A stretch of DNA of 63,926 nt, counting the filler, from Intoshia linei (lineage: Eukaryota; Animalia; Orthonectida): the NCBI GenBank assembly GCA_001642005.1. It is 5 parts of 5 records of this genome, joined end to end, with 100 filler letters (N's around TTAATTAATTAA, not from the genome) between each part and the next. Parts side by side here need not be neighbours in the genome. Positions count along the whole stretch, not along the records: positions 62,633 to 63,926 come from LWCA01002686.1; 4 more parts are not named here. One strand, 5' to 3'. Shown in pieces: positions 62,533 through 63,926 of this stretch; position 1 is the stretch's first letter; every line of letters starts with the position of its first letter. Below the pieces are notes generated by a model. That model was not told the origin of the DNA and did not search any database. It was given only the letters and a program-made list of their open reading frames with translations. Position numbers and translations under genes: made by a program.

Positions 62533-63332
62533 NNNNNNNNNNNNNNNNNNNNNNNNNNNNNNNNNNNNNNNNNNNNTTAATTAATTAANNNNNNNNNNNN
62601 NNNNNNNNNNNNNNNNNNNNNNNNNNNNNNNNTCATTATTTGCTTTGTAGCATGGTTCTATGTGATATCAATTTTAAATTTAGTATTATTACTTATTAAA
62701 AGTATACTTATATCAAATTGAATATCAAATTGAATGTTACCAATTAATTTAATAAATTAAACTTCTAGAATTTAAAAAAATATCAATTCTGTTGCTCGTT
62801 TTAAATTCAATAACATTGTCGTTAATCTCAGCCTTAGCAAATATTATATTTATTGTCAAAACACCAAATTATCCATTTTTTTAAAAATAAAAAAATTACT
62901 ACAAGTGTATAAAACATAAATTCTAGAATAATTTTTACAATCATAAGCATTATCATAAATACGAATCTCAATAAAGTGTTTTTTCACGATTAAAACTAAG
63001 ATTGCGTTTTTATATAATTGAAAATAGACCTAAAATTTTAACAAGTAGTAAAGCTCATGCAGCTATATCTACTTAATACACACAAAAAATTTTAATATCA
63101 GGAAGTGATTTATTTTATAAAAAAAATTAATTTGTGTGTTTAATTCTGAAGAGCCAATTACTGTATATTAAATGTTTATTAAAAAATTATATTAGATGTT
63201 GTCATCGTATAAATTCCGTCACTTTCACTTTTTAAAATAAACGGTAACAAACACACAAAGATATTATATTTAATATAGGTAAAGTATTTGTACTAATGAA
63301 ACGGTTCCATATCTATTATTGAATCGAAATAC

Positions 63333-63885
63333 CTTTACACATCATTAATGAAGAAATCCATAAACAACCCTTCATATTACAATCTTGATCATTAATAATA
63401 CCGTTGCATGATTCTGAATATAATGTCATCAATAAAGTATTATTTATATTTAATTGCACTAATTACCTTCACAGTAAATATATGCATCGTTCCATTTGCA
63501 ATTATTGATCTGACAATCTGCTGCATTAGTAAACATGTAGCACGCTTCTAAATTCACGGTAACGTACATATTTTATAAATGTAAAATATTAAGGAAAAAT
63601 CTACAAATATTATGCTTCATATTAAATTACCTGAGCAAAATAGGGCTCCATAACTCCACTGACATTCTTTCATCATACATTCATCATAATTTGTAACAGT
63701 TTCACATCTTTCTAAATATAATTTAATATTTTCTAATAATAATTATTATATTGGAGTAATATTTTTATTATAATTATATTTATTATAATACATTTAAAAA
63801 TAACCATAACAATAATTGGAAGCCTCATTCCACTTACAGTTCGATGTCAAACAATCCGGTTCTTGATTAAACCGGTAGCATGGTT
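63333..63885 (-). CDS. Cys-rich modular protein with at least 4 symmetric 81-nt exons, each a C-x8-C-x4-C-x-W-x6-C module; 5' end beyond the window, terminal exon uncertain
   Basis: Exons 63805-63885, 63631-63711, 63467-63547 and 63333-63413, all AG|...G|GT phase 1. Peptides EPCYRFNQEPDCLTSNCKWNEASNYCY, ERCETVTNYDECMMKECQWSYGALFCS, EACYMFTNAADCQINNCKWNDAYIYCE and ESCNGIINDQDCNMKGCLWISSLMMCK. Confidence 0.88.
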
Positions 63886-63926
63886 CTGATTAATTAAAAG
63901 TGTTTAAATGATTTAAATTAAATTAA

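What the first reader, a model, noticed from the sequence alone, without database searches (positions are those of the whole stretch)
63333..63885. One-exon-one-module gene: 81-nt phase-1 cassettes each encoding a 27-aa four-Cys/Trp domain
Seen: four consecutive exons, each exactly 81 nt and phase 1-1, separated by 53-93-nt introns. Each encodes E-x-C-x8-C-x4-C-x-W-x6-C-x, while most other positions differ between modules. The ORF track misses it entirely. Established: symmetric phase-1 exons are typical of shuffled extracellular modules, and any of them can be skipped without a frameshift. Inference: a fixed disulfide scaffold with variable loops, probably secreted or surface-exposed, diversified by exon duplication and possibly combinatorial splicing. 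This is reminiscent of schistosome micro-exon genes and ciliate Cys-repeat surface antigens. I cannot assign it to a named domain.
Basis: partly seen in the sequence, partly recalled or inferred. Interest (0 to 1): 0.85.

Follow-up and report, generated by a model that had tools for sequence, protein, structure and literature searches.

The report
Spliced array of mini-PSI cysteine modules
This is a real, transcribed and spliced piece of an orthonectid (Intoshia linei-like) gene in which each 81-base exon encodes one 27-residue, four-cysteine knot resembling the front half of a plexin/semaphorin PSI domain; the module family is undescribed and almost without relatives, but its biological role is still inferred.

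Summary
There are four 81-nt phase 1-1 exons (63885-63805, 63711-63631, 63547-63467, 63413-63333), with introns of 93, 83 and 53 nt. Each encodes E-x-C-x8-C-x4-C-x-W-x6-C-x. A fifth such exon starts at 62657 after a 675-nt intron and is cut by the piece edge.

Contigs of three 2024 runs lack the introns and join the exons at exactly these GT..AG sites; the 2016 DNA run does not.

A module profile run against 1.84 billion proteins found one true relative. It is a partial hypothetical protein of Intoshia linei, with a signal peptide and five modules, each on its own 81-nt phase-1 exon. Its contig is 92.5% identical to the window over 292 nt.

No Pfam family reaches threshold (PSI: E 0.016, one module). 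The AlphaFold model (pLDDT 90.6) matches almost only PSI domains and trypanosome VSG C-terminal domains among 48,161 solved chains, at low Z (up to 3.9).

Best reading: a lineage-specific secreted array of alternating type-1 and type-2 mini-PSI knots, lying in a higher-order tandem repeat.

Exon skipping is hinted at by an A-to-fifth-exon junction in three runs, but a paralogous unit could explain that junction equally well. The function is not shown.

The parts
63886..63926 (-). 3' end of the intron upstream of exon A (12% GC), ending in CAG
   Evidence: There is no RNA-contig depth in bin 63909-63926.
63805..63885 (-). Exon A: 81 nt, phase 1-1, type-1 module (starts EPCYR)
   Evidence: The junction 63805|63711 is seen in X3, X4 and X5. 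Pfam PSI scores E 0.016. The model has pLDDT 90.6.
63712..63804 (-). Intron, 93 nt, GT..AG, 7.5% GC
   Evidence: It is skipped exactly in the RNA contigs.
63631..63711 (-). Exon B: 81 nt, phase 1-1, type-2 module (starts ERCET)
   Evidence: Two sequence forms are present in both DNA and RNA. The model has pLDDT 83.9.
63548..63630 (-). Intron, 83 nt, GT..AG
63467..63547 (-). Exon C: 81 nt, phase 1-1, type-1 module
63414..63466 (-). Intron, 53 nt, GT..AG
63333..63413 (-). Exon D: 81 nt, phase 1-1, type-2 module
62658..63332 (-). Long intron, 675 nt, GT..AG. Its 3' 267 nt (62658-62924) belong to the 292-nt stretch that is 92.5% identical to the intron in front of module 5 of the Intoshia linei gene. 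It holds two short dispersed repeats.
   Evidence: It is skipped in the RNA contigs, and a 226-nt contig leaves no room for an extra exon.
62633..62657 (-). First 25 nt of a fifth module exon (EPCYKANN..., type 1), cut by the piece edge
   Evidence: Its first 8 residues are identical to the start of module 5 of P0001. It is joined to exon D, and in other contigs to exon A.

Best explanation
The piece is an internal part of a lineage-specific gene of an orthonectid (Intoshia linei or a very close relative). The gene encodes a secreted chain of 27-residue knots joined head to tail. Each knot is encoded by its own 81-nt phase 1-1 exon. Its predicted fold is a short helix plus a beta-hairpin around the invariant Trp. 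By analogy with the PSI domain, whose N-terminal core it resembles, two disulfides should hold it together (Cys1-Cys3 and Cys2-Cys4; inferred). Two module classes alternate (type 1, type 2), so the older repeat is a 54-residue di-module. In the genome the exons lie in a higher-order tandem unit of about 1.5 kb: four closely spaced exons, a long intron, and a fifth exon. Because every exon is symmetric, unequal crossing-over or exon skipping changes the number of knots without breaking the reading frame. Shown: the exon structure, the splicing, transcription, the single relative, the fold prediction and the repeat arrangement. Inferred: secretion, the disulfide pairing, and the role. I take the role to be an extracellular structural, coat or adhesive protein of the parasite, not an enzyme or a signalling receptor.
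For: Exon geometry, motif and shuffle control. Exact junctions in intron-free contigs of X3, X4 and X5, and none in the DNA run X1. The profile search of 1.84 billion proteins gave one true relative, P0001 (E 7.9e-28), named as a hypothetical protein of Intoshia linei. P0001 has a hydrophobic N-terminal exon ending in phase 1 and five modules, each on an 81-nt AG/GT-bounded exon. The window is 92.5% identical over 292 nt to that contig. The introns fit the I. linei median of 57 bp (PMC6543705). Fold: pLDDT 90.6 and 83.9. In a search of 48,161 chains, 12 of the 14 with Z>=2 are PSI domains (best: plexin A2 PSI2, Z 3.9, rmsd 1.6 over 30 residues) and one is a VSG C-terminal domain. The type-2 model gives VSG C-terminal domains (Z 4.5, 3.8) and PSI (Z 3.2). 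Pfam PSI E 0.016 and the ESM Atlas nearest cluster, PSI in 29% of members, point the same way. Two module classes. A DNA contig links exon A's upstream flank, through 237 nt, to another copy of the long-intron end plus fifth-exon start.
Against: No Pfam family reaches its threshold, and the other eight modules give no PSI hit. All structural Z scores are below 5, in the range the tool itself calls common, and AlphaFold may be drawn towards PSI from its training. The signal peptide is on another contig; that the window continues that gene, as opposed to a sister unit, is not shown. The two copies of the long-intron end share only some variants. The kind of runs X3-X5 is not on record; I infer RNA from the absence of introns. 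Nothing tests localisation, disulfides or function.
Confidence: 0.72

Rival explanations
1. Diversity generator. The symmetric cassettes are used combinatorially (exon skipping or choice), and together with very variable alleles or copies they produce many coat-protein variants at the parasite-host interface.
For: A junction joins exon A directly to the fifth exon, skipping B, C and D. It occurs in all three RNA-like runs at depths 1648/51/13, against 3537/69/22 for D to fifth exon. One contig joins a type-2 exon ending LMICN directly to exon A, although DNA places a fifth-type exon upstream of A. Of the 9 variant sites in the exons, 7 change the residue and none touches Cys or Trp. Variant density in exons is about the same as in non-exon sequence (my count from the variant table).
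Against: Only 25 nt lie on the far side of the skipping junction, and units with other exon content exist, so consecutive exons of a paralogous unit would look the same. Exon A-like sequence is carried by six contigs. Contigs cannot give isoform ratios. Exons C and D together carry only one variant. Seven replacements to two silent changes is near the neutral expectation.
Confidence: 0.2
2. Fragment of an ordinary PSI-domain receptor gene (plexin, semaphorin, integrin beta, MET-like or attractin-like).
For: PSI is the best Pfam, structural and Atlas lead.
Against: The modules have 27 residues and 4 Cys, against about 50 residues and 8 Cys. They score below the Pfam cut-off (16 vs 23.1 bits). 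There are nine in tandem with nothing between them. The relative P0001 has no Sema, IPT or integrin domain. The profile search of 1.84 billion proteins returned no plexin or semaphorin.
Confidence: 0.03
3. Polyprotein precursor that is cut into single 27-residue disulfide-rich peptides (toxin-, defensin- or pheromone-like).
For: A signal peptide is followed by many small knots of equal size. Contig depth is very high in one run.
Against: There are no linker or dibasic processing sites between modules; the modules abut directly. No toxin or defensin family was hit.
Confidence: 0.04
4. Not a functional gene: a chance pattern or a decayed repeat.
For: None beyond the lack of annotation on this short contig.
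Against: 0 of 2000 shuffles give even one motif. All frames are open, the splice sites are intact, and the spliced form is present in three runs.
Confidence: 0.01

Closest known systems
PSI domain (plexin-semaphorin-integrin; Pfam PF01437)
   Same: Extracellular, small and disulfide-rich. It has the same order Cys ... Cys ... Cys-x-Trp ... Cys. The predicted helix-plus-hairpin superposes on the first ~30 residues of PSI domains of plexins A2/A4/C1, semaphorins 2b/4D/6A, RON and MET (rmsd 1.2-1.8 A, Z 2.2-3.9). The four Cys that are kept correspond, by my reading of the known PSI pairing (1-4, 3-6; from memory, not tested), to the two disulfides that lie inside that half.
   Different: Half the length (27 vs ~50 residues), 4 instead of 8 Cys, and no C-x-W-C doublet. 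The loop before C-x-W is shorter. The score is below the Pfam threshold. The modules stand in uninterrupted tandem arrays, not as single spacers between Sema/IPT or integrin domains.
C-terminal domain of Trypanosoma brucei variant surface glycoproteins (2jwg, 2jwh, 5m4t, 1xu6)
   Same: About 30-40 residues and disulfide-rich (four Cys, from memory), with a D-C-x4-C-K-W motif. It gives a weak profile hit (E 0.66) and structural matches (Z 2.3 for module A, Z 4.5 and 3.8 for module B).
   Different: The scores are not significant. The spacing after Trp differs. VSG has one or two such domains next to a GPI anchor, not an array. The top score for module B includes an artefactual helix translated from intron sequence. 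Common descent between a kinetoplastid and a spiralian is unlikely.
Modular extracellular proteins built from phase 1-1 exons (EGF, LDL-receptor class A and similar)
   Same: One module per symmetric phase-1 exon behind a phase-1 signal-peptide exon. The module number is free to change by duplication or skipping.
   Different: The module is smaller, is a different fold family and is confined to one lineage. The modules here are not mixed with other domain types.
Schistosome micro-exon genes
   Same: A parasite gene, probably secreted, made of many short symmetric exons, with possible isoform variety.
   Different: From my own knowledge, micro-exon genes have exons of about 6-36 nt that do not each encode a folded Cys module. 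No sequence relation was found.

Membership tests
PSI domain (PF01437) | Score at or above Pfam's gathering threshold (23.1 bits) | tested here: not met
   The best of nine modules scores 16 bits (E 0.016). The other eight give no PSI hit. Whole P0001 gives none.
PSI domain (PF01437) | About 50 residues with eight conserved Cys, including the C-x-W-C doublet | tested here: not met
   27 residues with four Cys. C-x-W is followed by a non-Cys residue in all nine modules.
PSI domain (PF01437) | Fold: short helix and small antiparallel sheet, cross-linked by disulfides | tested here: inconclusive
   The predicted model superposes on the N-terminal ~30 residues of many PSI domains, and almost nothing else matches. 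But Z is at most 3.9, and this is a prediction compared with solved structures.
PSI domain (PF01437) | Disulfide pairing 1-4, 2-8, 3-6, 5-7 | not testable with these tools
The pairing Cys1-Cys3 / Cys2-Cys4 is inferred by analogy only.
VSG C-terminal domain | Significant sequence or structure match to solved VSG C-terminal domains | tested here: inconclusive
   Profile E 0.66 over 12 residues. Z 2.3 for module A, and Z 4.5/3.8 for a module B model that has an artefactual flank.
Trefoil (PF00088) | Score at or above the gathering threshold (21 bits) with the six-Cys pattern | tested here: not met
   Three modules reach E 0.012 or worse. There are four Cys only. No trefoil structure appears in the fold searches.
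Orthonectid 27-residue module family (this gene and OAF66235.1) | E-x-C-x8-C-x4-C-x-W-x6-C-x on an 81-nt phase 1-1 exon, with types 1 and 2 alternating | tested here: met
   All nine complete modules meet it: four in the window and five in L001.

The most novel reading that the evidence does not exclude
The array is a variable coat of the orthonectid at its interface with the host. A tandem genomic array of cassette exons, very divergent alleles or copies, and in-frame exon skipping together generate many versions of a chain of mini-PSI knots. The knots resemble the VSG C-terminal domain by convergence. This would be a metazoan parasite using cassette-exon choice for surface variation.
Probability: 0.12. 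Interest if true: 0.8.

Novelty: new variant of a known kind. Interest (0 to 1): 0.5.

Why it matters
Orthonectids are among the most reduced animals and their parasite-host biology is almost unknown at the molecular level. This is an abundantly transcribed, probably secreted gene with a single annotated relative among billions of proteins. It is built from a minimal two-disulfide version of the PSI fold. It shows how a half-domain can become an independent, exon-sized building block. It also gives a concrete candidate for the parasite's extracellular coat or matrix. Finally, it marks a locus that short-read assembly has broken and left unannotated. If the non-consecutive junctions prove to be true exon skipping, it would also be a simple natural system for cassette-based protein length or surface variation.

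Tried and rejected
- Pfam scans of each exon-bearing open stretch, of all nine modules and of P0001 gave only sub-threshold PSI, Trefoil, DUF1540 and CXCR4_N hits.
- PDB sequence searches with two profiles and one module gave nothing significant: VSG E 0.66, a Gla protein E 1.1.
- The word-based protein search with P0001 found only P0001 itself. With a nine-module alignment it found nothing. That tool is blind to proteins outside its length window.
- Rfam gave only a chance mir-360 hit: 19 bits against a cut-off of 60.
- The repeat finder shows no DNA-level repeats among the exons. They are only about 50-60% alike, so the duplications are old.
- A counterpart of P0001's annotated 38-residue spacer exon was sought in the 675-nt intron and not found. 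RNA joins D to the fifth exon directly.
- An overlap between the end of L001 and the start of the piece was sought. Only AT-rich, low-complexity similarity was found.
- Literature searches found no description of this gene or module.
Exons were used one by one by reference, and the database protein P0001 was used as given.

Full report
**Observation.** The feature lies on the minus strand of the piece 62633-63926, which is 23% GC.

- A pattern scan finds exactly four segments of the form AG|A(79 nt)G|GT: 63885-63805 (A), 63711-63631 (B), 63547-63467 (C) and 63413-63333 (D). Each is 81 nt.
- Each segment begins with two bases that complete a G|AA Glu codon and ends with the first base of the next one, so each is phase 1-1.
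- The introns are 93, 83 and 53 nt. They start GTTATT, GTAATT and GTAATT and end TAG, TAG and CAG.
- All four exons encode E-x-C-x8-C-x4-C-x-W-x6-C-x. Glu, the four Cys and the Trp are invariant, and mean column identity is about 51%.
- The Cys/Trp pattern occurs four times in the six-frame translation and never in 2000 shuffles of the piece.
- Exons are 28-40% GC and introns 7-20%.
- At the DNA level the exons are only moderately alike, and the repeat finder reports no repeat among them, so the duplications are old.
- After a 675-nt GT..AG interval, a fifth exon of the same kind begins at 62657 (EPCYKANN...). It is cut by the edge of the piece.

**Transcription and splicing.** One DNA run of 2016 (X1) covers the whole piece, introns included.

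- Three runs of 2024 (X3, X4, X5; kind not on record) have no depth in the three short introns and hold contigs that join 63413|63467, 63547|63631, 63711|63805 and 62657|63333. All these junctions read CT..AC on the plus strand, which is GT..AG on the gene's strand.
- X1 has none of these joined forms. I therefore take X3-X5 to be RNA-derived and the gene model to be confirmed to the base.
- A 226-nt contig runs from B through C and D into the fifth exon and leaves no room for an extra exon inside the 675-nt intron.

**Relatives and source.** A profile of the four modules was run against 1.84 billion cluster representatives. It returned two proteins.

- P0001 (E 7.9e-28, five matched stretches) is OAF66235.1, "hypothetical protein A3Q56_06048, partial [Intoshia linei]".
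- P0002 is a metagenomic protein with a different 55-residue repeat. It shares only the D-C-x4-C-x-W-N-x5-C core.
- P0001 starts with a hydrophobic signal-peptide-like segment and then has four modules, a 38-residue Cys-poor stretch and a fifth module beginning EPCYKANN.
- On its contig (L001, LWCA01000995.1) every module is again one 81-nt exon bounded by AG and GT in phase 1. The first exon also ends in phase 1.
- Window 62633-62924 (the end of the long intron plus the fifth-exon start) is 92.5% identical to L001 13369-13648, the same position in front of P0001's fifth module.
- The window therefore comes from I. linei or something very close to it. The intron sizes fit that genome's reported median of 57 bp (PMC6543705).
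- Word-based searches with P0001 and with a nine-module alignment found nothing else, and no paper describes the gene.

**Repeat architecture.** The nine modules fall into two classes that alternate along both loci.

- Type 1 (A, C, m1, m3, m5) shares 10-15 of 27 residues within the class.
- Type 2 (B, D, m2, m4) shares 9-17 of 27 residues within the class.
- Between the classes the modules share 6-12 of 27 residues.
- A 764-nt DNA contig of X1 links 63749-63926 (exon A and its upstream flank), through 237 other bases, to a copy of 62633-62996 that is about 91% identical.
- Upstream of exon A there is therefore another "long-intron end plus fifth-type exon". This means a higher-order tandem unit of about 1.5 kb, which also explains why the assembly broke here.
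- That copy and the L001 copy share a 12-nt deletion and two substitutions but differ elsewhere. Whether the window directly continues the P0001 gene or belongs to a sister unit is therefore open.

**Non-consecutive junctions.**

- In all three RNA-like runs one contig joins 63805 (the end of A) straight to 62657 (the start of the fifth exon), skipping B, C and D. Its depths are 1648/51/13, against 3537/69/22 for the D-to-fifth-exon junction.
- One X3 contig continues upstream of exon A with 16 bases that encode ...LMICN. This is the ending of a type-2 exon like m4, but it differs from L001's m4 at 3 of 16 bases. It is not the fifth-type exon that DNA places upstream of A.
- These junctions may be exon skipping. 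They may also be consecutive exons of other units in the array. Six different contigs carry A-like sequence, so other units are transcribed.
- Contigs cannot settle this question.

**Variation.**

- DNA shows two forms of the exon B region, each at half depth (7.9 and 8.1), and both forms are in the RNA.
- Across the four exons nine sites vary. Seven change the residue and two are silent. None touches Cys or Trp.
- By my count from the variant table, variant density in exons (about 2.8%) is like that in the surrounding non-exon sequence (about 2.6%). Exons C and D together carry only one variant.
- The numbers are too small to separate relaxed from diversifying selection.

**What the module is.**

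- No Pfam family passes its threshold. PSI reaches E 0.016 (16 bits, cut-off 23.1) for module A only. Trefoil reaches E 0.012 or worse for three modules.
- AlphaFold2 on module A with the nine-module alignment gives pLDDT 90.6, with a short helix and a two-stranded hairpin. Module B gives the same elements with pLDDT 83.9, plus an artefactual helix from the intron-encoded flank.
- Foldseek finds nothing significant, but its best rows are plexins and semaphorins (TM 0.75 by query, rmsd 1.1-1.2 A).
- An exhaustive alignment to 48,161 solved chains leaves only 14 with Z>=2. Twelve are PSI domains, matched over their first ~30 residues (plexin A2 PSI2 653-684: Z 3.9, rmsd 1.6, 30 aligned). One is a trypanosome VSG C-terminal domain and one is Cachd1.
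- For module B the VSG C-terminal domains lead (Z 4.5, 3.8), followed by PSI (Z 3.2).
- The PDB profile search's only hit is the motif EKDCKSPDCKWE of a VSG C-terminal domain (E 0.66).
- The ESM Atlas puts P0001 nearest to a cluster in which 29% of members carry PSI (score 0.75, a lead only).
- These leads are individually weak but agree. The module is best described as a mini-PSI: the N-terminal core with two internal disulfides, without the second half. The disulfide pairing is my inference from the known PSI pattern and was not tested.
- It is not a PSI family member by length, Cys count or score.

**Mechanism.**

- I read the product as a secreted, rod-like or beaded chain of rigid two-disulfide knots with variable loops.
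- It is made at a high level in at least one sample. That sample carries a different organism label but holds the same transcripts, so it may be infected host tissue; this is an inference.
- The phase-1 exon-per-module layout and the tandem 1.5-kb genomic unit make the number of knots easy to change.
- An extracellular structural, coat or adhesive role is the most economical reading.
- A role in surface variation is possible but not shown.

**Limits.**

Exons were used singly by reference, and P0001 was used as deposited.
- Run identities are coded.
- Contigs cannot give isoform proportions.

Noticed in passing
window 62797-62834 and 62908-62960: Two short segments inside the 675-nt intron are covered by many different contigs, with unrelated loose ends on both sides, in all four runs including the RNA-like ones. 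They look like copies of short dispersed repeats (possibly miniature transposon remnants) that are also transcribed elsewhere.
   Followed up: no
window 63636-63778: The DNA run holds two 143-nt contigs at depths 7.9 and 8.1 that differ at 8 positions (about 5.6%). Both exon B forms are expressed. This is either very divergent alleles or two near-identical units.
   Followed up: partly
L001 11463-11576: The annotated protein P0001 includes a 114-nt phase 1-1 exon encoding a 38-residue Cys-poor spacer between modules 4 and 5, with good splice sites. The window unit has no counterpart, and its RNA joins D directly to the fifth exon. The spacer may be unit-specific or a prediction artefact.
   Followed up: partly
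P0002 (JGI metagenome protein, 276 aa): This is a five-fold 55-residue repeat of unknown organism with no Pfam family. It shares the core D-C-x4-C-R-W-N-x5-C with the orthonectid type-1 modules. It is possibly another PSI-core derivative.
   Followed up: no
L001 1050-2174 and 4777-6407: The neighbours of the I. linei gene on its contig are a WD40/PROPPIN-like gene and a 413-residue gene without any Pfam hit, both on the opposite strand.
   Followed up: no
window 63197-63250 (-): A weak Rfam match to mir-360 (19 bits against a gathering score of 60, E 0.62). I take it as chance in AT-rich intron sequence.
   Followed up: no
window 63805-63885: Exon A-like sequence has much higher summed contig depth than exons C and D in the RNA-like runs (19,520 against 3,537 in X3) and is carried by six contigs. 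Most of that depth carries two changes at 63823 and 63825. Several units with A-like exons seem to be transcribed.
   Followed up: partly
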